Source of the DNA: Octopus sinensis
Lineage: Eukaryota
Assembly (NCBI RefSeq): GCF_006345805.1
Contig: NC_043025.1
Location: forward strand, 8,742,001-8,806,000
DNA: 64,000 bases
Reading direction: 5' to 3'
Shown piece after piece: positions 6,369 through 53,401 of the stretch. The notes below the pieces were generated by a model, which was given only the letters and a program-made list of their open reading frames with translations, was not told the DNA's origin and did no database searches. A program made the translations under genes and the position numbers. Numbering within the stretch: the first letter of the stretch is position 1; every line of letters begins with the position of its first letter.

Positions 6369-6436
6369 CTTATGTCAGCATCATGACGAACAAAAACTTT
6401 GAGATGACTGCCCACACGGAGTCCATATACATATAT

Positions 6437-6795: not shown

Positions 6796-6834
<39 letters not shown>

Positions 6835-7020
6835 CATACGATGGGCATCTTTCAGTTTCCGTCTACCAAATCCACTCACAAGGCTTTGGTCGTCCCGAGG
6901 CTATTGTTAGAAGACACTACTTGCCCAAGGTGCCATGCAATGGGACTGAACCCGGAACCATGTGGTTGGTAAGTAAGCTACTTACCACACAACCACTCCT
7001 GTGCCTATTTATATATATAT

Positions 7021-7062
<42 letters not shown>

Positions 7063-7225
7063 AGACTTCTTTCAGTTTCCGTCTACCAATCCACTTACAA
7101 GGCTTTGGTTGGCCTGAGGCTATAGTTAGAAGATACTACTTGCCCAAGGTGCCACGCAGTGGGACTGAACCCGGAACCATGTGGTTGGTAAGCAAGCTAC
7201 TTACCACACAGCCACTCCTATGCAT
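6437..7225 (-). repeat. Four tandem copies of the SINE family 3 head, each separated by (TA)n
   Basis: Units ~6444-6605, 6638-6797, 6843-7007, 7064-7222. Confidence 0.9.
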
Positions 7226-7239
7226 ATATATATATATAT

Positions 7240-9926: not shown

Positions 9927-10728
9927 CAGATGGTGGACTGCTGTGCTCTGTTCCCATACATTAGCTCATGTGGCAGATGGTGGACTGTTGTGCTCCGTTC
10001 CCATGCATTAGCTCATGTGGCAGATGGTGGACTGTTGTGCTCTGTTCCCATACATTAGCTCATGTGGCAGATGGTTGACTGTTGTGCTCCGTTCCCATGC
10101 ATTAGCTCATGTGGCAGATGGTGGACTGTTGTGCTCCGTTCCCATGCATTAGCTCATGTGGCAGATGGTGGACTGTTGTGCTCAGTTCCCATGGATTAGC
10201 TCATGTGGCAGATTGTGGACTGTTGTGCTCCGTTCCCATGCATTAGCTCATGTGGCAGATGGTGGACTGTTTTGCTCCGTTCCCATGCATTAGCTCATGT
10301 GGCAGATGGTGGACTGTTTTGCTCCGTTCCCATGCATTAGCTCATGTGGCAGATGGTGGACTGTTGTGCTCAGTTCCCATGCATTAGCTCATATGGCAGA
10401 TGGTGGACTGTTGTGCTCCGTTCCCATGCATTAGTTCATGTGGCAGATGGTGGACTGTTGTGCTCCGTTCCCATGGATTAGCTCATGTGGCAGATTGTGG
10501 ACTGTTGTGCTCCGTTCCCATGCATTAGCTCATGTGGCAGATGGTGGACTGTTTTGCTCCGTTCCCATGCATTAGCTCATGTGGCAGATGGTGGACTGTT
10601 TTGCTCCGTTCCCATGCATTAGCTCATGTGGCAGATGGTGGACTGTTGTGCTCAGTTCCCATGCATTAGCTCATATGGCAGATGGTGGACTGTTGTGCTC
10701 CGTTCCCATGCATTAGCTCATGTGGCAG
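9927..10728. repeat. 47-bp minisatellite, ~17 units
   Basis: Unit TGGCAGATGGTGGACTGTTGTGCTCCGTTCCCATGCATTAGCTCATG. Confidence 0.95.
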
Positions 10729-11214: not shown

Positions 11215-12445
11215 GAGATTGTGAGCTGCTCTCCGGCTTTATATAGCTATGGTAAGACCTCACCTGGAATTTGCATCACCGGTCTGGAACCCCTATCTTG
11301 CCCAGGATATTAATCGTCTGGAAGCCGTTCAGCGAAGTGCAACCAAACGAATACCCTCCATCAGGCATTTACCATATTCTGAACGCCTTACTTCCCTGGA
11401 CATGGACACATTAAAACTTCGACGTCTGGCAGCTGATTTGGCAGACACCCATAAAATTATTAACCATCTTACAAACAATAACTCTGAGCACCTTTTCAAA
11501 CTCCACCTGTCTAACACCCATGGACATATTTACAAAGTCAGAAAACAGCACAGCTCCCATGACTTTTGGAAACATAGCATGGAACAAACTGCCGGCATCA
11601 GTTGTTAATTGTCGGAGCACTGCATCCTTCAAAACTTCCCTGCTTCCTGAGATTCGCCAACACTACACCTGATTTTCTCCCCTCCATACACATGCAAGCA
11701 TGTATCTGACTCATGCATTGTTCGCTTTCCAGACATTTGTACATTACTGCATATACTTTATATACACTTTTGACAAGTTTTGGTGCACCTGAGCACTGTA
11801 TACAATAATTTCATTATTATTATTATTTAAAAACTCCACCTGTCTAACACCCGTGTTAGACAGGTTTACAAAGTCAGAAAACAGCACGGCTCCCATGACT
11901 TTCGGAAACATTTTTTCACGCTGAGAGTTGCTGAAGTATGGAACAAACTGCCGGCATCAGTTGTTAGTTGTCGGAGCACTGCATCCTTCAAAACTTCCAT
12001 GCTTCCTGAGAGATTCGCCAACACTACACACCTGATTTTCTCCCCTCCATACACACGCTGAGCATGGAACACACTGCTGGCATCAGTTGTTAGTTGTCGG
12101 AGCACTGCATCCTTCAAAACTTCCATGCTTTTTGAGATTCGCCAACACTACACTGATTTTCTCCCCTCCATACACAACGCTGAAGCATGGAACACACTGC
12201 CGGCATCAGTGTGTTAGTTGTCGGAGCACTGCATCCTTCAAAAATTTCTTGCTCCTGAGAGATTCCCAACACTACACCTGATTTTCTCCCCTCCATACAC
12301 ACGCTGAAGCATGGAACACACTGCCAGCATCAGTTGTTAGTTGTCGGAGCACTGCATCCTTCAAAACTTCCATGCTTTCGCACTTCTGACAAGTTGTGGT
12401 GCACCTGAGCACTGTATACAATAATTTCATCATTATTATTTTTAT
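11215..12445 (+). mobile_element. CR1-clade LINE 3' fragments, second copy with four tandem ~124-bp terminal units
   Basis: VRPHLEFASPVWNPYLAQDINRLEAVQRSATKRIP...YSERL...LKLRRLAADL; (ATT)n tails at ~11815 and ~12435. Confidence 0.9.
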
Positions 12446-13887
12446 TATTCGTTCTGTGACCGAGCAAGAGTGTGAAGCTTCTAAATAAGCAGTTCCCGTC
12501 TCCTGTGACTTTTACTATATAAAAAAGGTAAGATAATTTGATTTTCATCTTTTCTTGTTCCAGTTAATAGACTGCGGCCATGCTGGGGCACTGCTTGAAG
12601 AATTTTTAATCAAATGAATGACCCCGGGACTTATTTTTTGTTAAGCCTGGTACTTTTTTGAAAGGTCCACATACATGTGAAAGAAACAAGGAAGAAGAGG
12701 GATGAGAAAGGAAAACAAAGTAAAAGGGGAAAAAAAGAAACCCGGTGGCGGGAAGGTGTAGGGGGAAAGCGACCGAAGGAGAGGAGGGGCAAGAGACTAC
12801 ATATCCCAGAACAAGTAGGGTGCTCACTTGAGCCCTGCAGTAAAGAGAATGGGGGCATTGCCATGGAGAATGGCCAGTGACACTCGCTGCAGCGACCACC
12901 CCACCTGACAGGGCTCATTTCTCCAACAAGCCGCAGTTATCCCTATTTTGTGGAAGAAGTCGGCCATGCTGCAGCACTGCCCTAAAGGGTTTTTTTAGTT
13001 GAAGAAATCAACCCCAGAACTTATTCTGTCAGTCTCTTTTTGTTGAACCGCTAAGTTACAGGGGCATAAACACACCAACATTGGTTGCCAAGTGATGATG
13101 GGGGGACAAACCGACACACACACACACACACACACCACACACACACACAAACACACACATGTAGCAACATGATGCAGCACGAAGTTTTGTCAAGTGGACA
13201 GGTCGGGGTTTCAAACCAACGAAAATATTTTGACACAAATCAAAAATTTAACGGGGTATTTTTTTGTGTTTTTAAATGGCTTATAAATATCTTCCACGCT
13301 GCAATTGATTTTGTTTCAGCCCACGATCTCAGATCAAGTCACTCGCTATGCAAGTACATCTCCGTAATATATATATAATTTAAATTTTAAATTTTATATA
13401 TTTTGTATATTATATTAAATATTTTAATTTCTATGTTTTGGTTTATGTTTTTCACTGTTTGATTTGCCTAATAGGGGTTTTATCTCTAATTTAATTTATA
13501 TATATATATATGAGTTGCGACGTCACTGGTGCCAAGCTGTATCGACCTTTGTCTTTCCCTTGGATAACACTGGTGGCGTGGAGAGGGGAGGCCGGTATGC
13601 ATGGGCGACTGCTGGTCTTCCATAAAAAACAACCTTGCCCGGACTTGTGTCTAGGAGGGTAACTTTCTAGGTGCAATCCCATGGTCATTCATGACCGAAG
13701 GGGGTCTTTTATATATGTGTGTGTGTGGTGTGTGTGTAATATATATATATATATGTTAAGGTATGTAGAAAAATACAACATGGACAAGAACGTATAACTC
13801 ATAGAAGACGATACAATAAACATGGACAGGACATTCGAACCCCTCAGTCTTCAGTCAAGAACCGGATCATCGTAGTAATTTCGGCTG

Positions 13888-15719: not shown

Positions 15720-15975
15720 AAACTTTGGAACAAATTGCTGGCATCAGTTGTTAGTTGTCGGAACACTGCATCCTTCAAAACTTCCATGCTTCCTGAGATT
15801 CACCAACACTACACCTGATCTTCTCCCCTCCATACACACAAGCAAGCATGTATCTGACTCATACACTGTTCACTTCCCAGACATTTCTACATTACTGCAT
15901 ATACTTTATACGCACTTTCTGACAAGTTGTGGTGCACGTGAGCACTGTATACAATAATTTCATTGTTATTATTAT
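15720..15975 (+). mobile_element. Same CR1 family, short 3' end with a single terminal unit
   Basis: TGGAACAAATTGCTGGCATCAG...ATAATTTCATTGTTATTATT matches 11580-11825. Confidence 0.85.
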
Positions 15976-20659: not shown

Positions 20660-22020
20660 AATAATAATAATAATGATGAAATTATTGTATACAGTGCTCA
20701 GGTGCACCACAACTTGTCAGAAAGTGCGCATAAAGTATATGCAGTAATGTAGAAATGTCTGGGAAGTGAACAGTGTATGAGTCAGATACATGCTTGCTTG
20801 TGTGTATGGAGGGGAGAAAATCAGGTGTAGTGTTGGCGAATCTCAGGAAGCATGGGAGTTTTGAAGGATGCAGTGCTCCGACAACTAACAACTGATGCCG
20901 GCAGTTTGTTCCATGCTTCAGCGTGTGTATGGAGGGGAAGAGAAAATCAGGTTAGTGTTGGCGAATCTCAGAAAGCATGGAAGTTTTGAAGGATGCAGTG
21001 CTCCGACGACTAACAACTGATGCCGGCAGTTTGTTCCATGCTTCAGCGTGTGTATGGAGGGGAGAAAATCAGGTGTAGTGTTGGCGAATCTCTCAGGAGC
21101 ATGGAAGTTTTGAAGGATGCAGTGCTCCGACAACTAACAACTGATGCCGGCAGTGTGTTCCATGCTTCAGCGTGTGTATGGAGGGGAGAAAATCCGGTGT
21201 AGTGTTGGCGAATCTCAGGAAGCATGGAAGTTTTGAAGGATGCAGTGCTCCGACAAGTAACAACTGATGCCGGCTGTTTGTTCCATGCTTCAGCGTGTGT
21301 ATTGAGGGGAGAAAATCAGGTGTAGTGTTGGCGAATCTCTCAGGAAGCATGGAGTTTTGAAGGATGCAGTGCTCCGACAACTAACAACTGATGCCGGCAG
21401 TTTGTTCATGCTTCAGCGTGTGTATGGAGGGAAGAAAATCAGGTGTAGTGTTGCCGAATCTCAGGAAGCATGGAAGTTTTGAAGATGCAGTGCTCCGACA
21501 ACTAACAACTGATGCCGGCAGTTTGTTCCATGCTTCAGCGTGTGTATGGAGGGGAAGAGAAAATCAGGTGTAGTGTTGGCGAATCTCAGAAAGCATGGAA
21601 GTTTTGAAGGATGGAGTGCTCCGACAACTAACAACTGATGCCGGCAGTTTGTTCCATGCTTCAGCGTGTGTATAGAGGGGAGAAAATCAGGTGTAGTGTT
21701 GGCGAATCTCTCAGGAAGCAGGGAAGTTTTGAAGGATGCAGTGCTCTGACAACTAACAACTGATGCCGGCAGTTTGTTCCATGCTTCAGCAACTCTAAGC
21801 GTGAAAAATTGTTTCCTAAAGTCATGGAAGGAGCTGTGCTGTTTTCTGACTTTGTAAATATGTCCACGGGTGTTAGACGGGTGGAGTTTGAAAAGTTATT
21901 GCTTCTAAGATGGTTGATAATTTTATGGGTGTCTGCCAAGTCAGCTGCCAGACGTCGGAGTTTTAATGTGTCCATGCCCAAGGAAGTAAGGCGTTCAGAA
22001 TATGGCAAATGCCTGACGAT
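20660..22020 (-). mobile_element. Same CR1 family, 3' fragment with eight tandem ~124-bp units
   Basis: PYSERLTSLGMDTLKLRRLAADL at 22008-21940; GGATGCAGTGCTC recurs near 20866, 20991, 21115, 21238, 21362, 21484, 21609, 21734. Confidence 0.9.
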
Positions 22021-22981: not shown

Positions 22982-23899
22982 TGCAAAGCGTTGCGCAAGA
23001 GTTTCTCAGTAATATAATCTCTACAGTTGGAATTTTCAAATGCCAAGTAAAATTTATATTCTTTTTCTAACATTTCGAAACATATCGAATTTTTTGTACA
23101 GGTTTTTGCACCACAAACACCATAAATATCCACCTGGATATATTTTCCAAGTTCCTCAGCATAGCCCCTTCGATCATTGCTAGGACAGCAATTGGAAGTG
23201 AACCAAGCAACCTTCTTTGTTTTTCCCTTGGCATAATTTAAGTATTGTTTTCTCTGCCTTACTGAATCGATAAAATATTCATATTTCTGGAAGGGATATG
23301 CAATCGTACTGTCCTGACGATATGTGATCGTCCAATTGATTCTGTTCCCCAAGTGTCTAACTGACGGGTTGAAATTAGGAGACTCCTGTCATGTATATCC
23401 ATATCTGATTTGAGTTCTTTGGTTTCTCGGATATTCCTACTGTCTCATAAAAGAAAATAGCATCCACGCTGTCACGCTTTGTTTTGTCATATGTAACCAG
23501 GCATTCATTGACTGGGCAGTTCTGTGCCAAGAAAGTCCCTTGATTTTCTTTCAATGGTCGCAGATACTTTAAATTGTGTATTAATAATGTTTTAAACTTT
23601 CGTCGAATCGGTTTTGACTTGACATTTTCATCAGCATCTGACTGATTTGGGGACACATTCCGTTCATCATTTCCCCGTCTTTTCTTTGCCGATAAGGTAT
23701 ATCTTAGTTGAGCTTTCATTCGATCATTACCTGATTGTTTACCCGGAACTAGTAGAGACGAATAGCTTGTGTAGGAAACAGGTTGCTGTATCCCTATGAC
23801 AACATTTTGTTTGAATTTACAAAAATAGAAGTAATAAATGAATGCGATTATTGTTACGAAAAAGAGAAATACAAAATATTTTCGCCTGCAGGTTCTCAT
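22982..23899 (-). CDS. Alpha-1,3-fucosyltransferase (GT10, FucTA-like), coding exon 1, with one frameshift near 23383-23389
   Basis: ATG 23899 MRTCRRKYFVFLFFVTIIAFIYYFYF (type II membrane anchor), then NCPVNEC, WIYMT(G)ESP, NWTITYRQDS, VAWFTSNC and the GT10 motif YKFYLAFENSNCRDYITEKL. Donor CA|GTAAGT at 22981-22976. The two ORFs 23375-24091 and 22978-23352 join by a 1-nt shift. Confidence 0.9.
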
Positions 23900-24904
23900 T
23901 GCCTTTTGAGTGTTGTAAATATTGTGAATTACCTGTTTATGTAGTAGGTAGCATTTGTTGATTGTGAGAGAGAGACGGAGTGGGAGGCAGAAAGAAAGAG
24001 AGAGCGCAACAACTATGTGAAACAGGTTGGATAGAATAATACAAAATATGTATACGTGTATATATGTATATATATGTATACATGTATACATGAGAGAAAA
24101 TAAAGAGTAAAGGCTTTCAGGTGCTGAATATTAAAGTTCAGATATATTAATCCAGAGATTCCGTCTGTCGCTACGTTCTGAGTTCAAATTCCGCCGAAGT
24201 CGACTTTACCTTTCATCCTCTCGGGATCGATAATGAAGTACCAATTTCGTAATGGGTCGATATAAGTGACTTAATCTGTTTGTCTGTCCTTGTTTGTCCC
24301 CTCAATGTTTAACCCTTTGTGGGTAGTAAAGAAATAAGAAACGTTAGCACGCTGGGCGAAATGCTTTGCGGTATTTTGTCTGTCATTGCGTTCTGAGTTC
24401 AAATTCTGCCGAGGTCGACTTTGCCTTTCATCCTCTTGGGGTCGATAATAAAGTAGCAGTTTCGTACTGGGTCGATATAATCGACTTAATCCCTTTGTTT
24501 GTCCCCACTATGTTTAGCCCTTTGTGGGTAGTAAAGAAATATATATTAATATAGAGATCCAGTTTACACAGAATACAAAGGCAGAGAAAATTAAAGGAGA
24601 GGAAATAAGGTGTTGTAAGTCCAGCAGCTGTCTTTAGGGGCTTCGAGGTCCATCATGATGCTAGTAGATGTCACAATATGCAGACTGTAAAGGACGCAAT
24701 CAACAGTGGATGAGACGATCCTCCATTATCAGGTAGGAAATATCTTACATTTCGGACCACAGTACAATGAGGTTCAAAAGTAGAATGATTAAATGTGGAG
24801 AGCAAGTAGTGGGGGGTCAATAGGGTTGTGGGGAGTGGTAAGATGGAATGACGGGGAAGATAAGGGAGCTAGTTCATGAAAGAGGGGGCACTAATAATGA
24901 GGGT

Positions 24905-25265
24905 TTTGTCTTCTTCTTCCTCCCCTTCTTCTTCTTCTTCTTCTTCTTCTTCTCCTTCTTCTTCTTCTCCTCCCCCTCCTCCTTCTTCTTCTTCTCCTCC
25001 TTCTCCTTCTTCTTCTTCTTCTCCTCCTCCCCCTCCTGCTCGTTCTTCTTCTCCTCCTCCTTCTTCTTTTCTTCTTCTTCTCCTTCTCCTCTTCCTCCTC
25101 CTTCTTCTTCTCCTCCTCCTCCTCCTTCTTCTCCTTCACCTTCTTCTTCCCCTCCTCCTCCTCCTCCTCCTCCTTCATACCCTCTCGTTCTGGTTCTCCT
25201 CCTCCTTCTTCTTCCCCCTCTTCTCCTTCTTCTCCTTCACCGTCTTCTCCTCCTCCTCCTCCTCC
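24905..25265. repeat. (CTT)n/(CTC)n trinucleotide repeat
   Basis: Direct inspection. Confidence 0.95.
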
Positions 25266-26660
25266 TCTGCGGGCGAAGGCGGGCAAAGGCGGGCAAAGGC
25301 GGGCATCGATCGCGCCTACGTCCACATGTAGGGTTAGGGTTAGTTAGGGATCTTTTCGGTTTGAACGGCAGTTTTAACATAATTTCTACGTAACTAGACA
25401 CTTTTAAACTTCGTATACTGGCAGAATGTGTTTATAAAACATTTTTTTTCTCTTGGCTTTATTGAGAAAATTCTATGGTTTGTAAGATATTTGTTGTTTT
25501 TTTCTTCTTCAATTTCAGCAATTTCAACCAATCAATGACGTCTATTGAGGTAAAAAAACATTCTGTGCCGTATGAATATGTGCCTCGTTTAAGAAACAGA
25601 TTCGGTTTATTTACATTTGTGAAGAAAAAAAAGATACTCTTCCCCCTACCCCTAACCCTAACCCTAACTGTAACCCTAAAACAGATTGAAATGCAATAGA
25701 TCGATACTAGGGTCATAATTATGGGTGACAATTTCATATGACACCGCTAGAAAAAACTGCCATTCAAACCAAAAAGATCCCCTAACCCTAACCCTAAAAC
25801 AGATTGAAATGCAATAGATCGATTCTAGGGTCATAATTATGGGTGACAATTACATATGACACCGCTAATTATGTCATCCATAATTATGACCTTAGAATCG
25901 ATCTATTGCATTTCAATCTGGGTTAGGGTTAGGGGATCTTTTTGGTTTGAATGGCAGTTTTTTCTAGCGGTGTCATATGAAATTGTCACCCATAATTATG
26001 ACCCTAGTATCGATCTATTGCATTTCAATCTGATTTAGGTTAGGGGGAAGGGTATCTTTTTTTCTTCACAAATATAAATAAACCCAATCTGTTTCTTAAA
26101 CGAGGGACATATTCATATGGCACAGAATGCTTTTACCTCAATAGACGTCATTGATTGGTTGAAATTGCAGAAATTGAAAAAAAAACCCAAATATCTTACA
26201 AACTATAGAAAAAGCACCAACCGATCGTGACCATTGCCAGCCTCCCCTGGCACCTAAAATGCACCATCCGTACGTGGCCGTTGACTGGCTTCCGTGTTGG
26301 TGGTACGTAAAAAGCACCCACTACACCCATGGAGTGGTTGGCGTTAGGAAGGGCATCCAACTGTATAAACACTGCCAGATCAGACCAGAGCCTGGTGCAG
26401 CCTCCTGGCTTCCCAGACCCCGGTCGAACTGTCCAACCCGTGCTAGCACGGAAAACGGATATTAAACGATGATGAAGATGATGATGATGATGTATATGTG
26501 CATAGCTTTAGTTTAAATGTCTCCGTGTGTAATTATACTGTCGTGCTTATGTATGTGTGTGTGTGTGCACTGGTTTATCTAAATACCTGTGTGTGTGTGT
26601 ATATTGTAATGTATGTATGTGGGTGTGTATTTTGCATTATGAATGTGTGTGACTGTTTAA

Positions 26661-34600: not shown

Positions 34601-37600
34601 AAAGAAAGAATATATAAAATCAAAAATAAGCAACAAGGATATAGGGAGAGTTTACGAAAAAAACAAAAGACGAAGACAGGTGGTGTAGACAACAAACAGA
34701 TGTATTAGTATAACGCTCAGGAATAGAAAAAGTCTTTTACGTTTCGAGCCTACGCTCTTCTACAGAAAGGGACACAGAAAAAACAAGGAGACAAAAATAT
34801 GTGTGTAGTGGCTAATAGATGAGTGTATTTTCCCCTTGTTAACAATTAACACGGAAAAAAATAGATAAATAGTTACCAGGGCAGCAAAAAATCACACAAG
34901 TAAAGAGGTTATAACTCCTTGTTTTTAAAGGTAAAAACTTCGGGTTTATGTGGAATTTTTTGTATAATATATATATATAATAAATGGAGTTTAACACAGG
35001 TATAATTCAAATTATTCCAAAGAAATAAATGGTAAAAACAATGTAATCTTCTCTTCAGGGAGTGAAGCAATGAAACTTGTCAATGAGACATTTTAACAGA
35101 AAATGACGGATATGTATAGTGATTACTGAACGCTATTAATATTGTTTGAAAAAATGTTATATGATATAACGTCAGAAGTAGCCTATGAAAGAGGGGGGGA
35201 TATTTTTTTTAGTGAATGTAAATATAAAAAGAAAATTAATGTTTAAATTATATATAATGGTAGAGATTACTTATATGAACTAAAGGTGTGTTTTTGCCAA
35301 TGTTTACAACAATAATGATCTCTTGTATTGCTAACTCTTGTTTAGTGGAGTTATGAACCGACATTTCCTGTCATGTCCCCTTGTAGACAACCTTCTTCCT
35401 CAGCAGAGTTAACACACACCATCCTAACAGCACTAAGAATTCTCCTGTCTTGCTACTAGTTATTGATGGATACTTGCCAAGAGGCTGCCACATGAATCTA
35501 ACATGAACTCATAGAATTCATAGGGTAGTCAATATCTCTCTCCATCGCTCAGTCGAAGTCGACTCTCGGTCACTCATTGGATCAGTGTCCTCCAGTCAGT
35601 TCTATCTGGACTGCTCCTTCAGATTGGCTATGTCCATTCCGGTACACTCTTGATGGTCAAGCCAGCGGGTTCTGGTCGGCCTCTTCCTCTCTTGCCACTG
35701 ACAATTCCGTATATATTATATATATAGATATATATATCTATATATGTTATAGGGGCATTATTACACATAAATGCTCACACTAGGAGGGACAAAGTCATAC
35801 TACCAAAATTATACTAATCATACCCAAATGCAGTTTTTCAAAGCAAGACATTTAAAAATGAATTATGTTCTGTATCACCGTGATTTCACATAACAACTTG
35901 CGTCTAATGATCGTCAGCAGGAACTGATTCTGAATACATCATAAATAAACTACCAACCTTACGTAGCGGAGACGAACAGACAATGCTCACTCCGGCCAAG
36001 CACATGGAATGTTTATAAATATATCCGGTAAATGGCGGGCTTTTTACGAAACTGCCTGTCGGGTAATGAAAAGTATTTCGGAATAAGTTTAACAATTAAG
36101 GATAATCTCTTAATAAGGGATCTTAACAAGAATTATATCGGGTAGCTAGCGTGGAAACCTCATAAAAGAAAAGAATCCGAAAATAATTTTTTTCTTTTGA
36201 ACAAATTATTATATCTATATGTATAGAGGCATTATTACACATAAATGCCTCACACTAGGAGGGACAAAGTCATATTACTACAAAAATTATACTAATCATA
36301 CCCAATGCAGTTTTTCAAAGCAAGACATTTAAAAATGAATTATGTTCTGTATCACCGGGATTACATACAACTTGCGTCTAATGATCGTCAGCAGAACTGA
36401 TTCTGAATAACATCATAAAAAAACTACCAACCCAACGTAGCGGAGACGAACAGAAAGCTCACTCGGCCAAGCACATGGAATGTTTATAAATCATATATCC
36501 GGTAATGGCGGGCTTTTTACGAACTGCATGTCGGGTAATGAAAAGTATTTCGGAATAAGTTTAACAATTAAGGATATCTTAATAAGGGATCTTAACAAGA
36601 ATTATCGGGTAGCTAGCGTGAAAACCTCATAAAAGAAAAGAATCCGAAAATAATTTTTTTCTTTTGAACAAATTAATTATATCTATATTGTATAGAGGCA
36701 TATTACACAAATATGCCTCACACTAGGAGGGACAAAGTCATTACTACCAAAAATTATACTAATCATACCCAAATGCAGTTTTTCAAAGCAAGACATTTAA
36801 AATGAATTATGTCTGTATCACCGTGATTTCACATACAACTTGCGTCTAATGATCGTCAGCAGAACTGATTCTGAATACATCATAAATAAACTACCAACCT
36901 ACGTAGCGGAGACGAACAGACAACTGCTCACTCCGGCCAAGCCATGGAATGCTTATAAATCATATATCCGGTAAATGGCGGGCTTTTACGAACTGCATGT
37001 CGGGTAATGAAAAGTATTTCGGAATAAGTTAACAATTAAGGATAATCTCTTAATAGGGATCTTAACAGAGAAATTATCGGGTAGCTAGCGTGAAAAACCT
37101 CATAAAAGAAAAGAATCCGAAAATAATTTTTTTCTTTTGAACAAATTAATTATATCTATATTGTATAGAGGGCATTATTACACATAAATGCCTCACACTA
37201 GGAGGGACAAAGTCATTACTACCAAAATTATACTAATCATACCCAAATGCAGTTTTTCAAAGCAAGACATTTAAAATGAATTATGTTCTGTATCACCGTG
37301 ATTTCACATACAACTTGCGTCTAATGATCGTCAGCAGACTGATTCTGATACATCATAAATAAACTACCAACCTTACGTAGCGGAGACGAACAGACAACGG
37401 CTCACTCCGGCCAAGCACATGGAATTGCTTATAAATCATATATCCGGTAAATGGCGGGCTTTTTACGAACTGCATGTCGGGTAATGAAAAGTATTTGGAA
37501 TAAGTTTAACAATAAGGATAATCTCTAATAAGGGATCTTAACAAGAAATTATCGGGTAGCTAGCGTGAAAACCTCATAAAAGAAAAGAATCCGAAAATTA

Positions 37601-37759
37601 ATTTTTTTTCTTTTGAACAAATTAATTATATCTATATTGTATAGAGGGCATTATTACACATAAATGCCTCACACTAGGTAGGACAAGTCATTACTACAAA
37701 AATTATACTAATCATACCCAAATGCAGTTTTCAAAGCAAGACATTTAAAAATGAATTAT

Positions 37760-37815
37760 GTTCTGTATCACCGTGATTTCACATACAACTTGCGTCTAAT
37801 GATCGTCAGCAGAAC
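37760..37815 (-). ncRNA. Type I hammerhead ribozyme of the 473-bp monomer (representative intact copy; others at 35867-35924, 36344-36397 core damaged, 36811-36865, 37285-37339, 38236-38291, 38702-38757, 39177-39232)
   Basis: Minus strand reads GUUCUG CUGACGA UCAUUAGACGCAAGUUGUAUGU GAAA UCACGGUGA UA/CAGAAC: 6-bp stem I, canonical CUGANGA and GAAA core, stem II with GCAA loop, near-palindromic stem III, AUA triplet. Confidence 0.85.
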
Positions 37816-39995
37816 TGATTCTGAATACATCATAAATAAACTACCAACCTTACGTAGCGGAGACGAACAGACAATGCTCATCTCGGCAAAGCACATGGAA
37901 TGCTATAAATCATATATCCGGTAAATGGCGGGCTTTTTACGAAATGCATGTCGGGTAATGAAAAGTATTTCGGAATAAGTTTAACAATTAAGGATAATCT
38001 CTTAATAAGGGATCTTAACAAGAAATTATCGGGTAGCTAGCGTGAAAACCTCATAAAAGAAAAGAATCGAAAATAATTTTTTTCTTTTGAACAAATTAAT
38101 TATATCTATATTGTATGAGGGCATTATTACACATAAATGCCTCACACTAGGAGGGACAAAGTCATTACTACCAAAAATTATACTAATCATACCCAAATGC
38201 AGGTTTTCAAAGCAAGACATTTAAAAATGAATTATGTTCTGTATCACCGTGATTTCACATACAACTTGCGTCTAATGATCGTCAGCAGAACTGATTCTGA
38301 ATACATCATAAAAACTACCAACCTACGTAGCGGAGACGAAAGACAACTGCTCACTCCGGCCAAGCACATGGAATGTTTATAAATCATATATCCGGTAAAT
38401 GGCGGGCTTTTACGAACTGCATGTCGGGTAATGAAAAGTATTCGGAATAAGTTTAACAATAAGGATAATCTCTTAATAAGGGATCTTAACAAGAAATTAT
38501 CGGTAGCTAGCGTGAAACCTCATAAAAGAAAAGAATCCGAAAATAATTTTTTTTGAACAAATTAATTATATCTATATTGTATAGAGGGCATTATTACAAT
38601 AAATGCCTCACCTAGGAGGGACAAAGTCATTACTACCAAAAATTATAACTAATCATACCCAAATGCAGTTTTTCAAAGCAAGACATTTAAAAATGAATTA
38701 TGTTCTGTATCACCGTGATTTCACATACAACTTGCGTCTAATGATCGTCAGCAGAACTGATTCTGAATACATCATAAATAAACTACCAACCTTACGTAGC
38801 GGAGACGAACAGACAACTGCTCACTCCGGCCAAGCACATGGAATGTTTATAATCATATATCCGGTAAATGGCGGGCTTTTACGAACTGCATGTCGGGTAA
38901 TGAAAAGTATTTCGGAATAAGTTTAACAATTAAGGATAATCTCTTAATAAGGGATCTTAACAAGAAATTATCGGGTAGCTAGCGTGAAACCTCATAAAAG
39001 AAAAGATCCGAAAATAATTTTTTTCTTTTGAACAAATTAACTATATCTATATTGTATAGAGGGCATTATTACACATAAATGCCTCACACTAGGAGGGACA
39101 AAGTCATTACTACCAAAATTATACTAATCATACCCAAATGCAGTTTTTCAAAGCAAGACATTTAAACAGGAATTATGTTCTGTATCACCGTGATTTCACA
39201 TACAACTTGCGTCTAATGATCGTCAGCAGAACTGATTCTGAATACATCATAAATAAACTACCAACCTTACGTAGCGGAGACGAACAGACAACTGCTCACT
39301 CCGGCCAAGCACATGGAATGTTTATAAATCATATATCCGGTAAATGGCGGGCTTTTTACGAACTGCATGTCGGGTAATGAAAAGTATTTCGGAATAAGTT
39401 TAACAATAAGGATAATCTCTTAATAAGGGATCTTAACAAGAAATTATCGGGTAGCTAGCGTGAAAACCTCATAAAAGAAAAGAATCCGAAAATAATTTTT
39501 TTCTTTTGAACAATTAATATATCTATATTGTATAGAGGGCATTATTACACATAAATGCCTCACACTAGGAGGGACCAAGTCATTACTACCAAAATGTCTT
39601 GCTTTGAAAAACTGCATTTGGGTATGATTAGTATTTTTGGTAAGTAATGACTTGTCCCTCCTAGTGTGAGGCATTTATGTGTAATAATGCCTCTATACAT
39701 ATATAGATATAATTAATTTGTTCAAAAGAAAAAAATTATTTTCGGATTCTTTTCTTTATGAGGTTTTCACGCTAGCTACCCGATAATTTCTTGTAAGATC
39801 CCTTATTAAGAGATTATCCTTAATTGTTAAACTTATTCCGAAATACTTTTCATTACCCGACATGCAGTTCGTAAAAAGCCCGCCATTACCGGATATATGA
39901 TTTATAAACATTCCATGTGCTTGGCCGGAGTGAGCAGTTGTCTGTTCGTCTCCGCTACGTAAGGTTGGTAGTTATTTATGATGTATTCAGAATCA

Positions 39996-40050
39996 GTTCT
40001 GCTGACGATCATTAGACGCAAGTTGTAGTGAAATCACGGTGATACAGAAC
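39996..40050 (+). ncRNA. Type I hammerhead copy in the inverted part of the array
   Basis: GTTCTG CTGACGA TCATTAGACGCAAGTTGTAGT GAAA TCACGGTGA TA CAGAAC on the + strand (one base missing in stem II relative to consensus). Confidence 0.75.
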
Positions 40051-40549
40051 ATAATTCATTTTTAAATGTCTTGCTTTGAAAAACTGCATTTGGGTATGAT
40101 TAGTATAATTTTTGGTAGTAATGACTTTGTCCCTCCTAGTGTGAGGCATTATGTGTAATAATGCCCTCTATACAATATAGATATAATTAATTTGTTCAAA
40201 AGAAAAAAATATTTTCGGATTCTTTTCTTTATGAGGTTTTCACGCTAGCTACCCGATAATTTCTTGTTAAGATCCCTTATTAAGAGATTATCCTTAATTG
40301 TTAAACTTATATTATATATAATATATATAGATATATATATATATATTTATATATATATATATCCGCTCAGTCGAAGTTGACTCTCGGTTACTCGTTGGAT
40401 CAGTGTCTCCAGTCAGTTCTATCCTGGGCCACTTCTTTCAGATTGGCTATGTCCATTCCAGTATCCCTCTTGATGGTGTCAAGCCAGTGGGTCTTGGTCG
40501 GCCTCTCCTCTCTTGCCACTGACCATTCCGTATATATATATATATATAT

Positions 40550-40830
40550 CCGCTCAGTCGAAGTTGACTCTCGGTTACTCGTTGGATCACTGTCCTCCAG
40601 TCAGTTCTATCCGGGGGCCGCTTCTTTCAGATTGGCTATGTCCATTCCAGTATCACTCTTGATGGTGTCAAGCCAGCGGGTTCTTGGTCGGCCTCTTCCT
40701 CTCTTGCCACTGACCATTCCGAGCATGATGTCCTTCTCCAGGGATTTTCTCTGCATAATATGACCGAAATATGCCAATCTATGCTTGGTGATCCCAGCTT
40801 CTAGCGACATTTTTGGCCCTATCTGCAATA
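40550..40830 (-). mobile_element. RTE (BovB-like) LINE 3' end; its terminal ~165 bp are repeated at 35546-35709 and 40363-40530
   Basis: RLAYFGHIMQRKSLEKDIMLGMVSGKRGRGRPRTRWLDTIK. Confidence 0.85.
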
Positions 40831-44790: not shown

Positions 44791-46654
44791 GGGAGGACAG
44801 CATCGTCACTCGGCTCCTAACAAATTTGCCTCACGGACCGGTCAAAGGGAGAATACTCGAGTTTGCCGACCAACAAGGTTTATTATTTGCTTACTATTAC
44901 CTGCCCCTAATGGATTTCTACAGCCGACTTCAGTAGTATATGCCCCCCCCCTCGTCATTAAGGGTGCTGAGTCGTTCATAGGGTTAAGTGTCTTAAATAT
45001 ACGAATGGATCTTTTCGGTTTGACCGGCAGTTTTTTCTAGCGGTGTCATACGAAATTGTCACCCATAATTATGACCCTAGAATCGATCTATTGCATTTCA
45101 ATCTGTTTTAGGGCTAGAGTTAGGGGGAAAGGTATCTTTTTTAATTCAGAAATGTAAATAAACCCAATCTGTTTCTTAAACGAGGGACATATTCATACGG
45201 CAAAGAATGTTTTTTTTTTTACCTCAATAGACGTCAGTGATTGGTTGATATTGCTGAAATTGAAGAAAAAAAAAAACAACAAATATCTTAGAAACTATAG
45301 AATTTTCTCAATAAAGCCAAGAAAAAAAGATGTTTTATTTTACACATTCTACCAGTATACGAAGTTTAAAAGTGTTTAGTTACATGGAATCATTTTAAAA
45401 AAACTGCCTTTCAAACCGAAAGATCCCACTCTATGACTGGACATATACTTAACTACATATAAATATATATATATATATGTTGATATGTTTTGCCGATCCG
45501 CTAAGTTACGGTCACGTAAAACACCCAGCATCGGTTGTCAAGCGATGTTGGACACACACACAGACACACAAGCACTTACACACACATACATATATATAAT
45601 ATATATATATATATATATACATATATATACGAGGGCTTCTTTCAGTTTCCTTCTCTACCAAATCCACTCACAAGGCATTTGTGGGCCCGAGACTATCGTA
45701 GAAGACACTTGACCTAGGTGCCATGTAGTGGGACTGACCCTGAACCATGTGTGGTCCGTAAGCAAGCTACTTACCACACAGCCACTCCTACCTTCATCTT
45801 TATTCCAGTTGTTGGGCCGTGGTAATGCTGGAGCAACACCTCGAACAAATTCAGTCGATTTATTCGACTGAAAACCAGCTGGAAACCGTTCAGCGACGTG
45901 CAACCGGGAGAATACCTTCCATAGGCATTAGCCGTATTCTGGACGCCTTAGCGTAAATTCTCGAGTATATTCCGCCCTTGATTATAATACGCAGGGGAAT
46001 TTTAGGGGGCTGTATCTCTGTAAAACCTAATCCTTGTGTATAATACGCACCCCTTCTCTGACTTGAGTCAAGGAGGTCTATAAAATGTCCTTGCTTTGTA
46101 AAAATGTATATGGTCACGTCCTTTATTATTATTGTATATCTAACATAATGCAAACGTGAAGCTTTTTTGTGCATGTTTTTGTTTGCAGAAAATAAAGAAA
46201 TAACAGTAATAACGTTTAATAAATGTTATTATTATTATTATTATTATATATACATGCCGTAAATCCTCGAGTATAGTCAGCCCCTGAGTATAATACGCAG
46301 GGGATTTTTAAGGGGGCTGTACCTCTGTAAAACCTAAAGCGTGTGTATAATACGCACCCCTTCTCTAACTTGAGTTAAGGAGGTCGTATATAACGTCCTT
46401 GGTTTGTAAGAATGTATACGGTAACGTAATTTATTATTATTGTATACATAACATAATGCAAACCTTATCTTTTTTGTGCATTTTGTTTGCAGAAAATAAA
46501 GAAATAACAGTAATAACGTCAGTGAAAAATAAATATTAAGTAAATTGTCTTTACATATTTATCACTATCAGTTACAAAAGCAAAGCCATTTATTAAAATC
46601 CTTCAAATTCAACGTCTCTTTCAGCATCAAATAACTGTTCTATTTGTTCCTCCG

Positions 46655-47575
46655 TATGTATGTATGTATGTATGTATGTATGTATGTATGTATGTATGTA
46701 TGTATGTATGTATGTATGTATGTATGTATGTATGTATGTATGTGTTTTTGTATGTATGTATGTATGTATGTATGTATGTGTATGTATGTACGTATGTATG
46801 TATGTATGTATGTGTGTTTGTATGTATGTATGAATGTATGTATGTATGTGTGTTTGTATGTATGTATGTATGTATGTATGTATGTATGTATGTGTGTGTG
46901 TATGTATGTATGTATGTATTTATGTATGTATGTATGTATGTATGTATGTATGTATGTATGTGATTATGTATGTATGTACGTAGGTAGTACGTATGTATGT
47001 ATGTATGTATGCATGTATGTATGTTTGTACGTATGTATGTATGTAGGGTATGTGTGTTTGTTTTATGTATGTATGTATGATGTATGTATGTGTGGTTGGC
47101 ATGTGTGTATGTATGTATGTATGTATGTATGTAGGTATGTATGTATGTATGTGATGTATGTATGTATGTACGTTAGTAGTACGTATGTATGTATGTATGT
47201 ATGCATGTATGTGGTTTGTACGTATGTATGTATGTAGGGTATGTGTGTTTGTTTTATGTATGTATGTATGATGTATGTATGTGTGGTTGGCATGTGTGTA
47301 TGTATGTATGTATGTGATGTATGTATGTATGTATGTATGTATGTATGTATGTATGTATGTATGTGATGTATGTATGTATGTATGTATGTATGTGATGTAT
47401 GTATGTATGTATGTATGTATGTATGTATGTATGTATGTATGTACGTATGTATGTATGTACGTATGTATGTATGTTTGTATGTATGTATGTATGTATGTAT
47501 GTGTGTTTGCATGTATGTATGTATGTATGTATGTATGTGATGTATGTATCTATGTATGTATGTATGCATGTATGC

Positions 47576-47608
<33 letters not shown>

Positions 47609-47904
47609 TGTATGTATGTGATGTATGTATGTATGTATGTATGTGTGTTTGCATGTATGAATGTATGTATGTATGTATGTGATGTATGTATGTATGTATG
47701 TATGTATGTATGTATGTGGTGATTATGTATGTATGTATGTATGTATGTATGCATGTATGTATGTATGTATGTACGTGTATGTATGTTTGTGTATGTATGT
47801 ATTTTGTATGTATGTATGTATGTATGTATGTGTGTTTGCATGTATGTATGTATGTATGTATGTATGTATGTATGTGATGTATGTATGTATGTATGCATGT
47901 ATGC

Positions 47905-47936
<32 letters not shown>

Positions 47937-48035
47937 GTGTTTGCATGTATGTATGTATGTATGTATGTGATGTATGTATGTATGTATGTATGTGTGTTTG
48001 CATGTATGTATTATGTATGTATGATGTATGTGATG

Positions 48036-48067
<32 letters not shown>

Positions 48068-48275
48068 TGTATGTATGTATGTATGTACGTATGTATGTAT
48101 GTACGTATGTATGTAATGTTTGTATGTATGTTATGTATGTAGTATGGTGTAGTGTGTTTTGCATGTATGTATGTATGTATGTACGTATGTATGTATGATG
48201 TATGTATGTATGTGTATGTATGTATGTATGTATGTATGTATGTATGTATGTACGTATGTATGTATGTATGTGTAT
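46655..48275. repeat. (TATG)n tetranucleotide satellite, ~1.6 kb
   Basis: Direct inspection. Confidence 0.98.
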
Positions 48276-52246: not shown

Positions 52247-52330
52247 CGGTTTTTGACTATTTATTAAATTTTATGTATTGATTAAGTCTTTCCTTGTTTG
52301 TTTTGCAAAATAGTGGTTTTGTCTCAAATA

Positions 52331-52360
<30 letters not shown>

Positions 52361-52363
<3 letters not shown>

Positions 52364-53125
52364 CAATTAAGGACAACTACTTAATAAGGAAAACTTAACA
52401 AGAAATTGTCAGGTAGATAGCGTAAAAACCTCAAGAGAAAAAATTTCGAAATAATTATTCTTATTGAACATATTAATTTATATATAGAGGCATTATACAT
52501 ACATGCCAGACGGCATTATACATACATGCCAAACGCTAAGAGGGACAATCAGTCATTTCTACCAAAATCAGTCATTTCTGCCAAAAGCGTTTGGCATGTA
52601 TGTATAATGCCGTCTGGCATGTATGTATAATGCCCTCTATATATAAATTAATATGTTCAATAAGAAATAATTATTTTCGAAATTTTTTCTCTTATGAGGT
52701 TTTTACGCTATCTACCTGACAATTTCTTGTTAAGTTTTCCTTATTAAGTAGTTGTCCTTAATTGCTAAATTTTTATTCCGAAAAAACTTTTCCTCTCCCG
52801 AAATGCAATTCGTAAAAATGCCATTTACCCGGATGTAATATATGTAAACTCACCCATGTGCTTCGTGATGTTGATCAGTTAGCTGATCGGCTTAAGCGGG
52901 CAGGGTCGTTGTTTATTTATAATACATTCAGGCCTGCTGATGATTACGTAAGTATGAAATCACTGTGATACAGGTCTATATTTTTAAATGTCTTACTTTG
53001 AAAAATTGCATTCGGTGGGATTAGTAATATTTTTGGTAGAAATGACTGATTGTCCCTCTTAGTGTTTGGCATGTATGTATAATGCCGTCTGGCATGTATG
53101 TATAATGCCCTCTATATATAAATTA
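52361..53125. repeat. Diverged relative of the 473-bp family: one ~475-bp monomer plus partial copy and a head-to-head inversion, in (TA)n
   Basis: Colinear similarity to the 35.7-40.3 kb monomer along its length; ATGCCCTCTATAT recurs at 52630 and 53105 (475 bp apart); arms 52361-52567 and 52587 onward are inverted. Confidence 0.9.
52931..52976 (+). ncRNA. Type I hammerhead ribozyme, second family
   Basis: GGCCUG CUGAUGA UUACGUAAGUAU GAAA UCACUGUGA UA/CAGGUC: stem I GGCCUG:CAGGUC, stem II UAC-GUAA-GUA closed by U.U, stem III AUCAC-U-GUGAU. Confidence 0.85.
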
Positions 53126-53401
53126 TATATATATATATATAAATTAAATTAGAGATAAAACCACTATTAGGCAACTCAAACAGTGATAGACTTAAACCAA
53201 AACATAAAAAATTAAAAATTAAATATAATTAATATAATATATAATGTATATATAATAATATATAATTTAAAATTTGAATTAAAATTTAAAATTTTTTAAT
53301 TTGTATTTTTAAATTTTGATATTTAAAATTTTTTAATTTAAATCTTTTTTAAAAATAACTAACCAAAAAGTATGAAAAAGCTAAATTAAATATAATAAGT
53401 A

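What the first reader, a model, noticed from the sequence alone, without database searches (positions are those of the whole stretch)
52361..53125. Second, diverged family conserves the ribozyme by covariation, including a non-canonical U.U pair and AUA site
Seen: this ~475-bp relative is clearly diverged overall and its linker next to the ribozyme is rewritten, yet the HHR fold is kept: stem I GUUCUG:CAGAAC becomes GGCCUG:CAGGUC (U-A to C-G and U-A to G.U), stem II shortens but keeps a GNRA loop (GCAA to GUAA), stem III changes only its central base, and the core stays CUGAYGA/GAAA. Both families close stem II with U10.1.U11.1 instead of the usual G-C and use AUA. Inference: selection acts on RNA structure, and these two families define a distinct hammerhead variant. 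This is the strongest in-window evidence that the motif is functional.
Basis: partly seen in the sequence, partly recalled or inferred. Interest (0 to 1): 0.88.

Follow-up and report, generated by a model that had tools for sequence, protein, structure and literature searches.

The report
Hammerhead-ribozyme retrozyme, second subfamily insertion
This is one insertion of a second, diverged subfamily of a ~475-nt non-coding mobile repeat whose RNA carries a self-cleaving hammerhead ribozyme kept intact by compensating mutations; it belongs to a known class (animal "retrozymes" linked to Penelope-like retroelements), and its unusual ribozyme features have been seen before.

Summary
At 52931-52976 (+) lies a complete type I hammerhead: helix I GGCCUG/CAGGUC, CUGAUGA, helix II U.U+UAC-GUAA-GUA, GAAA, palindromic helix III AUCAcugUGAU, with cleavage after A52970. 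It is homologous to the hammerhead of the 475-nt array at 35733-40310. The two families are about 72% identical. All core bases are kept, and two of six helix I pairs changed on both sides with none broken.

Chance gives about 0.003 such motifs per window. Neutral drift at the element's own rate keeps the fold in about 0.2% of simulations.

The "distinct new variant" claim is weaker. U.U at the base of helix II is published for axolotl retrozymes. AUA sites are known in viroid and satellite hammerheads.

The locus is a composite insertion in a (TA)n microsatellite, not a plain monomer. It has an inverted 5'-truncated arm (52361-52567) joined head-to-head to 1.1 sense copies (52586-53125). Family 1 has the same plan, which is the signature of Penelope-like-element insertion.

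Helix III is too weak alone. Two copies are predicted to fold as a double hammerhead, so this single-ribozyme copy is probably inert.

Verdict: new member of the known non-LTR retrozyme class. No Rfam hammerhead match; no outside homologues retrievable.

The parts
52931..52976 (+). Family 2 type I hammerhead ribozyme. Helix I 52931-36/52971-76; core CUGAUGA 52937-43; helix II U.U + 3 bp + GUAA 52944-55; GAAA 52956-59; helix III 52959-69. Predicted cleavage between A52970 and C52971.
   Evidence: Direct reading; pattern and descriptor hits; pair counts.
52586..53125 (+). Family 2 sense arm, 1.1 monomers (period 475). It runs from about consensus position 93 through 478 and on to about 146. Its 3' end abuts (TA)n.
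   Evidence: Direct repeat 52586-52650 = 53061-53125 at 98%; BLAST to consensus; end mapping.
52361..52567 (-). Family 2 inverted, 5'-truncated arm (consensus 64 to 261). It has no ribozyme. Its 3' end abuts the left (TA)n and its 5' end meets the sense arm head-to-head.
   Evidence: Inverted repeats I1, I3, I5; BLAST 96% to the F2 monomer; end mapping.
52547..52584 (.). 19-nt tandem duplication (AATCAGTCATTTCTRCCAA x2) at the head-to-head junction.
   Evidence: TRF; direct repeat D5.
52337..52362 (.). (TA)13 microsatellite, left side of the target site. The matching right side is 53125-53140.
   Evidence: TRF; sequence.
35733..39595 (-). Family 1 array, 8.2 tandem 475-nt monomers with the ribozyme on the minus strand. 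It runs from consensus 64 at 39595 to consensus 141 at 35733. Four copies pass the strict hammerhead descriptor, for example 39177-39232.
   Evidence: TRF period 475, 94% matches; BLAST; descriptor.
39592..40310 (+). Family 1 inverted partner arm, 1.5 monomers (consensus 20 to 478, then 1 to 268). Its hammerhead at 39996-40050 carries a 1-nt deletion in helix II. A 4-nt overlap AAAT lies at the junction.
52282..52336 (.). Left half of a 55-nt imperfect palindrome in the host flank. Its partner is 53141-53195 (78% complementary). The (TA)n target sat at the centre of this older palindromic repeat.
   Evidence: Inverted repeat I4; BLAST.

Best explanation
The interval is one genomic insertion of a second subfamily (F2) of a ~475-nt, AT-rich (33-34% G+C), non-coding retroelement. 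It belongs to the 'non-LTR retrozyme' type, the small hammerhead-bearing tandem repeats of animals regarded as non-autonomous partners of Penelope-like elements (PLEs).

Proposed cycle:
1. Multimeric sense transcripts of tandem copies fold so that two neighbouring ribozymes pair through the palindromic helix III (AUCACnGUGAU). This forms a double hammerhead.
2. Each ribozyme cleaves after A17 of AUA and releases 475-nt monomers.
3. The monomers are circularised by a host tRNA ligase into highly self-paired circles.
4. A PLE reverse transcriptase/GIY-YIG endonuclease acting in trans cuts a (TA)n microsatellite on both strands. It primes cDNA synthesis from both 3' ends at internal, A/U-rich sites of the RNA.
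5. This leaves two arms with their 3' ends outward and their 5'-truncated ends joined head-to-head. Rolling-circle copying gives tandem units.

Shown here:
- the motif, its homology between families and its compensated evolution
- the predicted double-hammerhead fold
- the strong sense-strand fold
- the tandem/inverted architecture and the (TA)n target

Inferred, not shown: self-cleavage, circular RNA, and the involvement of a PLE enzyme.

The F2 copy at this locus has a single ribozyme and is therefore most likely a dead-end insertion. Its intact ribozyme would reflect selection on active F2 source copies elsewhere in the genome.
For: - All 11 core bases plus H17 and three helices are present in both families.
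- The chance expectation for the motif is 0.003 per shuffled window.
- In helix I, 2 of 6 pairs changed on both sides and none is broken.
- Every other ribozyme difference lies at a free position: N7, the GNRA second base, the loop-3 centre. The helix II length change is symmetric, 5+5 nt.
- Under simulated neutral drift the fold survives with P=0.0018.
- The helix III hairpin alone is about -0.2 kcal/mol (F1) and -1.0 kcal/mol (F2). The cofold MFE of two copies is exactly the double hammerhead, at -29.3 kcal/mol (F1) and -25.1 kcal/mol (F2), against -9.1 and -8.7 per monomer. This matches the published architecture of metazoan type I hammerheads (PMC4209133).
- The circular sense monomers fold far better than shuffles (z=-6.3 for F1, z=-4.8 for F2). 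They are also much more stable than the antisense strands.
- Substitutions between the families preserve the predicted fold outside the ribozyme as well.
- Both loci show the same plan: (TA)n, then a minus arm, then a head-to-head junction, then a plus arm, then (TA)n.
- PLE insertions are described as partial tandems with an adjacent inverted 5'-truncated copy and a (TA)n/microsatellite bias (PMC8557442).
- A purified PLE protein cleaves and extends both DNA strands, prefers AT-rich DNA and initiates internally on the RNA (PMC11167929).
- Non-LTR retrozymes are described as 150-450-bp, low-GC, ORF-less tandem repeats with type I hammerheads, found in molluscs among others and related to PLE pLTRs (PMC7229834; bioRxiv 10.64898/2026.07.22.740005).
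- No ORF in the array has any database relative.
Against: - No Rfam hammerhead model matches either family. This holds at gathering score and at E<=10 in 141-151-nt slices.
- The hammerhead fold is not the monomer MFE, and monomer folding z-scores are insignificant.
- G10.1-C11.1, which is highly conserved in natural hammerheads including PLE ones (PMC4209133), is replaced by U.U. AUA is a catalytically sub-optimal site (PMC1636495).
- The covariation evidence rests on two lineages only.
- No PLE reverse transcriptase is present in the window.
- No homologous monomers from other genomes could be retrieved.
- Several F1 copies carry single-base indels that break helix I or II. These may be assembly errors or decay.
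- The monomer length of 475 nt is slightly above the published 150-450 range.
Confidence: 0.7

Rival explanations
1. The 475-nt units are pseudo-LTR (terminal repeat) fragments of an autonomous Penelope-like element, not an independent non-autonomous retrozyme family. The ribozyme would be selected as part of the PLE itself.
For: PLE pLTRs carry type I hammerheads, and PLE insertions are tandem/inverted and 5'-truncated (PMC4209133; PMC8557442). Retrozymes and pLTRs are sequence-related in Xenopus. The architecture seen here is the PLE one.
Against: Eight consecutive 475-nt units occur with no coding region between them. No reverse-transcriptase or GIY-YIG ORF lies in or near either locus. Helix sizes (I 6 bp, II 4 bp in F2, a real helix III) are those of 'canonical' metazoan retrozyme hammerheads. 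They differ from the minimal PLE type, which has a bulged base after A9 and G10.1-C11.1.
Confidence: 0.13
2. An ordinary satellite/repeat family carrying a decaying relic hammerhead. The two families share the motif only by descent, and the compensated changes are luck.
For: Only two lineages are compared. No Rfam hit. U.U and AUA are both sub-optimal. Several F1 copies have broken helices. The monomer MFE is not the hammerhead fold.
Against: The simulated probability of an intact fold at the observed divergence is 0.0018, and with two compensated helix I pairs about 1e-5 jointly. The ribozyme accumulates substitutions at about the same rate as the rest of the element, but only at tolerated or compensated positions. 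There is also structure-preserving substitution across the whole monomer and a strand-specific folding excess.
Confidence: 0.1
3. A DNA-level foldback or palindromic element (MITE-like, or a product of replication template switching at a (TA)n cruciform). The hammerhead-like motif would be irrelevant to its spread.
For: Both loci contain long inverted repeats centred between (TA)n tracts. The F2 target itself lies in an older palindrome (repeat I4).
Against: The outer ends of the two arms are not inverted copies of each other (consensus 141 against 268, and 261 against about 146). There are therefore no terminal inverted repeats. The arms are unequal (8.2 against 1.5 copies; 0.4 against 1.1 copies). 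Tandem more-than-unit copies and 5' truncation are retroelement features. A DNA-level model does not explain the RNA-level compensated changes.
Confidence: 0.04

Closest known systems
Metazoan non-LTR retrozymes (Cervera & de la Pena 2020, PMC7229834), e.g. the Mytilus 350-390-nt and axolotl Rtz_331/Rtz_353 repeats
   Same: - Type I hammerhead inside short, ORF-less, low-GC tandem repeats.
- Highly self-paired sense RNA.
- Weak, palindromic helix III that calls for a dimeric ribozyme.
- The axolotl HHR_Amex2 has the same U.U mismatch at the base of helix II.
   Different: - The monomer is 475 nt, slightly longer than the published 150-450 range.
- F1 has an unusually long, interrupted helix II (9 positions).
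- The site is AUA.
- Expression and circularity were not examined here.
- Explicit head-to-head inverted arms in (TA)n are documented at both loci.
Penelope-like elements and their pLTR hammerheads (PMC4209133; PMC8557442; PMC11167929)
   Same: - Insertion architecture: partial tandem plus an adjacent inverted 5'-truncated copy.
- (TA)n/AT-rich target preference.
- Variable internal 3' junctions, consistent with internal initiation and extension from both cleaved strands.
- Hammerhead with a palindromic helix III.
   Different: - No RT/GIY-YIG ORF here.
- The PLE minimal hammerheads have almost no helix III, a bulged base between A9 and 10.1, and a conserved G10.1-C11.1. None of these applies here.
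Newt satellite 2 / avocado sunblotch viroid double hammerheads (Forster 1988; Epstein & Gall 1987, as reviewed in PMC6155905)
   Same: Helix III is unstable in a single motif. An extended intermolecular helix III is predicted when two copies pair.
   Different: Different host and sequence. Here helix III has 4 bp with a triloop and forms a 10-bp duplex with one central mismatch (G.G in F1, U.U in F2).
Rfam Hammerhead_1 (RF00163) and related models
   Same: Same core consensus and type I topology on manual reading.
   Different: No match at any threshold tried. Rfam-based censuses would therefore miss this family, for example the 235 Hammerhead_1 hits reported for the giant squid genome (PMC6962438).

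Membership tests
Hammerhead ribozyme (type I) | Conserved core C3 U4 G5 A6 N7 G8 A9 / G12 A13 A14 / A15.1-U16.1 / H17 | tested here: met
   All are present in F2 (52937-52943, 52956-52959, 52969-52970) and in the F1 consensus.
Hammerhead ribozyme (type I) | Three helices around the core, with helix I open-ended | tested here: met
   Helix I has 6-7 bp. Helix II has 3 bp plus U.U (F2), or 3+3 bp with an internal loop (F1). Helix III has 4 bp with a triloop, and is stable only as a dimer.
Hammerhead ribozyme (type I) | G10.1-C11.1 closing pair of helix II (strongly conserved, not absolute) | tested here: not met
   Both families have U.U. The same exception is published for axolotl HHR_Amex2 (PMC7229834).
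Hammerhead ribozyme (type I) | Match to a curated covariance model (Rfam clan of hammerhead families) | tested here: not met
   No hammerhead hit at gathering score, nor at E<=10 in 19 kb or in 141-151-nt slices.
Hammerhead ribozyme (type I) | Site-specific self-cleavage giving 5'-OH and 2',3'-cyclic phosphate | not testable with these tools
   Needs in-vitro transcription of monomeric and dimeric constructs.
Hammerhead ribozyme (type I) | Helices supported by covariation | tested here: inconclusive
   In helix I, 2 of 6 pairs changed on both sides and none is broken. Simulation gives P about 1e-3. Only two independent lineages are available, and helix III never varies.
Non-LTR retrozyme | Type I hammerhead within short (150-450 bp) head-to-tail tandem repeats | tested here: met
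   F1 has 8.2+1.5 units of 475 nt. F2 has 1.1 units plus an inverted partial unit. The length is marginally above the published range.
Non-LTR retrozyme | Low G+C (<45-50%), no LTR/PBS/PPT, no coding capacity | tested here: met
   G+C is 34.1% (F1) and 33.3% (F2). The longest ORF is 105 aa and has no relatives. PBS/PPT were not specifically searched.
Non-LTR retrozyme | Highly self-paired sense RNA | tested here: met
   Circular MFE z-scores are -6.3 (F1) and -4.8 (F2), with 65-67% of bases paired. Sense is much more stable than antisense. Substitutions preserve the structure.
Non-LTR retrozyme | [quoted passage not shown] | not testable with these tools
   No transcriptome access.
PLE-mediated insertion | Partial tandem plus an adjacent inverted 5'-truncated copy | tested here: met
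   Both loci have a minus arm and a plus arm joined 5'-to-5'.
PLE-mediated insertion | Insertion bias for microsatellite/AT-rich DNA | tested here: met
   (TA)n lies on both sides of both loci. The F1 locus sits in the (TA)n between 189-nt repeat units.
PLE-mediated insertion | An autonomous PLE (RT + GIY-YIG) in the same genome, with termini related to the element | not testable with these tools
   There is none in the window, and no eukaryotic genome collection is available.

The most novel reading that the evidence does not exclude
Two independent insertions, of two subfamilies about 28% diverged, at unrelated target sites, share their internal junction positions.
- In both loci one arm starts at exactly consensus position 64.
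- In both loci the two outward 3' ends fall at about 141-146 and about 261-268, one of each per locus.

If this is not coincidence, retrozyme RNA carries conserved, structure- or sequence-defined sites where the mobilising PLE enzyme initiates and where it stops or switches template. Position 64 lies at the foot of the strongest long-range helix of the predicted circle. In that case the best-conserved part of the element (columns about 160-340, 80-87% identity) would be the enzyme-recognition module rather than the ribozyme.

A second, smaller point: the U.U/AUA hammerhead escapes all Rfam models. Ribozyme censuses of such genomes may therefore be missing whole retrozyme families.
Probability: 0.25. 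Interest if true: 0.55.

Novelty: new member of a known kind. Interest (0 to 1): 0.36.

Why it matters
Their comparison gives clean in-window evidence that the hammerhead and the rest of the RNA fold are under purifying selection.

The two loci are also textbook-quality natural examples of the architecture predicted by recent biochemistry of Penelope-like elements. That biochemistry shows cleavage and priming on both strands, internal initiation and AT-rich targets. This strengthens the still indirect link between animal retrozymes and PLEs.

The fact that Rfam models miss the ribozyme is a practical warning for automated ncRNA annotation.

It does not establish a new ribozyme class. The U.U closing mismatch and the AUA site both have published precedents.

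Tried and rejected
1. Rfam scans of the whole window, of 35-54 kb, and of two ~150-nt slices gave no hammerhead match. The only hits were low-complexity miRNA-like noise.

2. Homologous monomers were sought elsewhere, without success.
   - JGI metagenome contigs, searched with a ribozyme pattern, gave 25 hits. All lack helix I/II and are chance.
   - IMG/VR, searched with a conserved non-ribozyme segment, gave 0 hits.
   - GTDB genomes gave one cyanobacterial chance hit without helix I.
   - A protein search with the longest spurious ORF of the array, hoping that gene callers had 'translated' related arrays in other assemblies, found no candidates.

3. Identifying the source organism failed.
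   - A fucosyltransferase-like ORF gave no homologues.
   - An RTE-type RT fragment gave 291 unnamed ENA hits.
   - Two long ENA contigs carrying such hits (L026, L027) share no other repeat with the window and contain no retrozyme copy.
   - The 'cephalopod' attribution therefore could not be checked.

4. Monomer thermodynamic folding of the ribozyme was tried as evidence of function. It is uninformative (z about -0.1 to -0.7), because helix III is too weak alone.

5. I looked for a conserved extension of helix I that would give a loop 1 for tertiary contact with loop 2. It is present in F1 (GAAU/AUUC beyond a CA/AUA internal loop) but not conserved in F2. No claim is made about tertiary contacts.

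6. A structural alignment of helix II by MAFFT misplaced the F2 gap. Helix II was therefore compared by hand and left out of the tool-based pair count.

Full report
OBSERVATION

The sequence at 52361-53125 was read directly. At 52931-52976 on the + strand there is a complete type I hammerhead:
- helix I 5' strand GGCCUG
- core CUGAUGA
- helix II U-UAC-GUAA-GUA-U
- GAAA
- helix III A-UCA-cug-UGA-U
- A17
- helix I 3' strand CAGGUC

Cleavage is predicted between A52970 and C52971.

The 475-nt tandem array at 35733-39595 (TRF: 8.2 copies, 94% matches) carries the homologous motif on the minus strand: GUUCUG CUGACGA UCAUUAGAC-GCAA-GUUGUAUGU GAAA UCAcggUGA UA CAGAAC.

A global alignment of the family 1 (F1) consensus with the family 2 (F2) monomer gives 72% identical columns. 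The stretch just upstream of the ribozyme is the least conserved part, at 52-65%. Outside the ribozyme, 19.4% of aligned positions are substituted.

- In helix I, U-A becomes G.U and U-A becomes C-G.
- N7 changes from C to U.
- GCAA becomes GUAA.
- Only the central base of loop 3 differs.
- U10.1.U11.1 and AUA are present in both families.

The pair-counting tool, applied to an alignment of four F1 copies and F2, reports for helix I six pairs, two changed on both sides and none broken. Helix III never varies.

IS IT MORE THAN CHANCE?

- A hammerhead descriptor that leaves 10.1/11.1 free finds only F1 and F2 copies in the real window.
- It finds 0.003 hits per dinucleotide-shuffled window, on both strands.
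- I mutated the F1 ribozyme in silico at the element's own substitution rate and transition/transversion ratio. This left core plus three helices intact in 0.18% of 200,000 trials.
- It produced an intact helix I with at least two double-sided changes in 0.1% of trials.
- The ribozyme has diverged about as fast as the rest of the element. All its substitutions sit at free positions or are compensated, and the helix II length change is symmetric at 5+5 nt.

This is good evidence for selection on the fold. It rests on one pairwise comparison of two lineages.

WHAT THE LOCUS REALLY IS

The interval is not a single monomer.
- 52361-52567 is a minus-orientation, 5'-truncated piece (consensus 64 to 261) without a ribozyme.
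- A 19-nt duplication follows it at the junction.
- 52586-53125 is a plus-orientation piece of 1.1 monomers (consensus about 93, through 478, to about 146) with the one ribozyme.
- The two pieces meet 5'-end to 5'-end.
- Their 3' ends abut (TA)n on both sides.

Family 1 has the same plan.
- The minus array runs from consensus 64 (39595) to 141 (35733).
- It is joined, with a 4-nt overlap, to a plus arm running from consensus 20 (39592) to 268 (40310).
- This locus too lies between (TA)n tracts.

The target sites are unrelated.
- F1 sits in the (TA)n between 189-nt repeat units.
- F2 sits in the (TA)n at the centre of an older 55-nt palindrome (repeat I4).

These are therefore independent insertions.

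HOW THE RIBOZYME WOULD WORK

As a single motif, helix III is essentially unstable. The hairpin is worth -0.2 kcal/mol in F1 and -1.0 kcal/mol in F2. The monomer MFE is not the hammerhead fold.

The helix III sequence AUCACnGUGAU is a palindrome. The cofold MFE of two copies is exactly a double hammerhead, with a 10-bp intermolecular helix III and one central mismatch (G.G in F1, U.U in F2). Its energy is -29.3 kcal/mol for F1 and -25.1 kcal/mol for F2. The corresponding monomer MFEs are -9.1 and -8.7 kcal/mol.

This is the published architecture of metazoan type I hammerheads: helix I 6 bp, helix II 4 bp, and a short helix III with a palindromic loop, active as dimers in tandem transcripts (PMC4209133; PMC6155905). 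It also explains why the only loop-3 change is the central, unpaired base.

A corollary follows. The F2 locus has only one ribozyme, so it cannot form the dimer in cis and is probably a dead-end copy. Its intact ribozyme reflects selection on source copies elsewhere in the genome.

THE WHOLE RNA

- Folded as circles, the sense monomers are far more stable than shuffles. F1 gives -126.6 kcal/mol (z=-6.3) and F2 gives -116.7 kcal/mol (z=-4.8).
- They are also more stable than their antisense strands, at -100.0 and -94.5 kcal/mol.
- I took the structure predicted from one family alone and asked how the other family's substitutions treat it. There are 12-13 double-sided changes against about 5 expected, and 26-35 broken pairs against 44-46 expected (P<=0.007).
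- The signal persists with the ribozyme excluded: P=0.04 and 0.0075 for double-sided changes.
- The 'rewritten linker' upstream of the ribozyme keeps a hairpin with a different stem sequence in each family.

Selection on RNA structure is therefore a property of the whole element, on the ribozyme-sense strand. Caveats: the structures are MFE predictions for 475-nt RNAs, and there are only two sequences.

COMPARISON WITH WHAT IS KNOWN

Non-LTR retrozymes are defined as short (150-450 bp), low-GC, ORF-less tandem repeats with type I hammerheads. They are expressed as highly self-paired circular RNAs in cnidarians, molluscs (mussel), amphibians and others (PMC7229834). A 2026 preprint shows their relatedness to PLE pLTRs.

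PLE insertions are partial tandems, often with an adjacent inverted 5'-truncated copy, and show a microsatellite/(TA)n bias (PMC8557442). A purified PLE protein cleaves and extends both DNA strands, prefers AT-rich DNA and initiates reverse transcription internally on the RNA (PMC11167929).

Priming from both cleaved strands predicts the geometry seen at both loci:
- a left arm that is antisense
- a right arm that is sense
- 3' ends facing outward
- truncated 5' ends joined in the middle

I therefore file the element as a non-LTR retrozyme inserted by a PLE-type mechanism. Self-cleavage, circular RNA and the PLE enzyme itself are inferred. No RT/GIY-YIG ORF lies in the window.

THE 'DISTINCT VARIANT' CLAIM

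- A U.U mismatch at the base of helix II is described for the about 60,000 HHR_Amex2 ribozymes of axolotl retrozymes. These cleave weakly as monomers and efficiently as dimers (PMC7229834).
- AUA precedes the cleavage site in ELVd(+), sCYDV-RPV(+) and cscRNA(-), and is catalytically sub-optimal (PMC1636495).
- Here AUA follows from the U15.2-A16.2 pair of the palindromic helix III.

The combination is therefore a variation within known natural diversity, not a new class.

One feature is real and practically relevant. No Rfam hammerhead model detects either family at any threshold tried. Rfam-based counts would therefore miss it, for example the 235 Hammerhead_1 loci reported for the giant squid (PMC6962438).

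UNEXPLAINED BUT INTERESTING

The two independent insertions share junction positions.
- One arm starts at exactly consensus 64 in both loci.
- Each locus has one 3' end at about 141-146, within the TA-like AUAUAGAUAUA segment.
- Each locus has the other 3' end at about 261-268.

By my own rough calculation the chance probability of this is of the order of 1e-3 to 1e-2; this figure is not a tool result. It suggests preferred initiation and stop sites on the RNA, but two loci cannot establish that.

LIMITS

- No homologous monomers could be obtained from any available collection.
- The source organism could not be identified.
- Several F1 copies carry single-base indels in helices. These may be long-read assembly errors or decay.

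VERDICT

The feature is a new member of a known kind.

Noticed in passing
window 35546-35726 and 40363-40721: The family 1 retrozyme block is inserted in the (TA)n between copies of a 189-nt tandem repeat. The left flank is 89% identical to the units on the right. This gives a clean 'filled site' with recognisable pre-insertion context.
   Followed up: partly
window 6425-7239, with further copies near 2955, 14270, 17901, 28948, 32598, 34191, 41535, 45634, 54208 and 55058: An abundant ~190-nt SINE-like repeat with at least 15 copies in 64 kb. In the tandem block 6425-7239 each unit begins with (TA)n, and several of the dispersed copies I compared (near 14270, 17901, 41535, 45634) lie next to (TA)n microsatellites. 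TA microsatellites appear to be general insertion or tail sites in this genome.
   Followed up: partly
window 52282-52336 / 53141-53195; related copy at 13379-13497: The host flanks of the family 2 insertion form a 55-nt imperfect palindrome (78%) around the (TA)n target. The right flank has an 82% relative elsewhere in the window. The target was therefore itself inside an older palindromic repeat.
   Followed up: partly
window 11576-12378, 15726-15839 (+) and 20800-21790 (-): A 124/247-nt tandem repeat family is present as arrays in opposite orientations about 8 kb apart.
   Followed up: no
window 9927-10728: A 47-nt minisatellite, 17 copies at 95% identity.
   Followed up: no
window 46654-48271: (GTAT)n of about 405 units. 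It causes many spurious mir-297/mir-466-like covariance-model hits below gathering score.
   Followed up: no
window 25644-25679: A short interstitial (CCCTAA)6 telomere-type repeat, next to a long CT-rich/TCT tract at 24909-25267.
   Followed up: no
window 23375-24091 (-): An ORF whose C-terminal part weakly resembles the N-terminal domain of fucosyltransferases (Pfam PF17039, E=1e-4, below cut-off). It may be an exon. No homologues were found by the word-indexed protein search.
   Followed up: partly
window 4487-4972 (-): The C-terminal fragment of an RTE-type LINE reverse transcriptase. It has 291 unnamed relatives in ENA assemblies, the best at 94% identity. Two long ENA contigs carrying relatives share nothing else with the window.
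   Followed up: partly
window 8116-8660: A 280-nt tandem duplication containing a tRNA-like B-box segment (GGTTCAAATC). It is probably a tRNA-derived SINE.
   Followed up: no
window 35733-40310: Differences among family 1 copies are dominated by single-base indels, often in homopolymers (4% indels by TRF). This pattern suggests uncorrected long-read assembly errors. Apparent ribozyme defects in individual copies should be read with caution.
   Followed up: no
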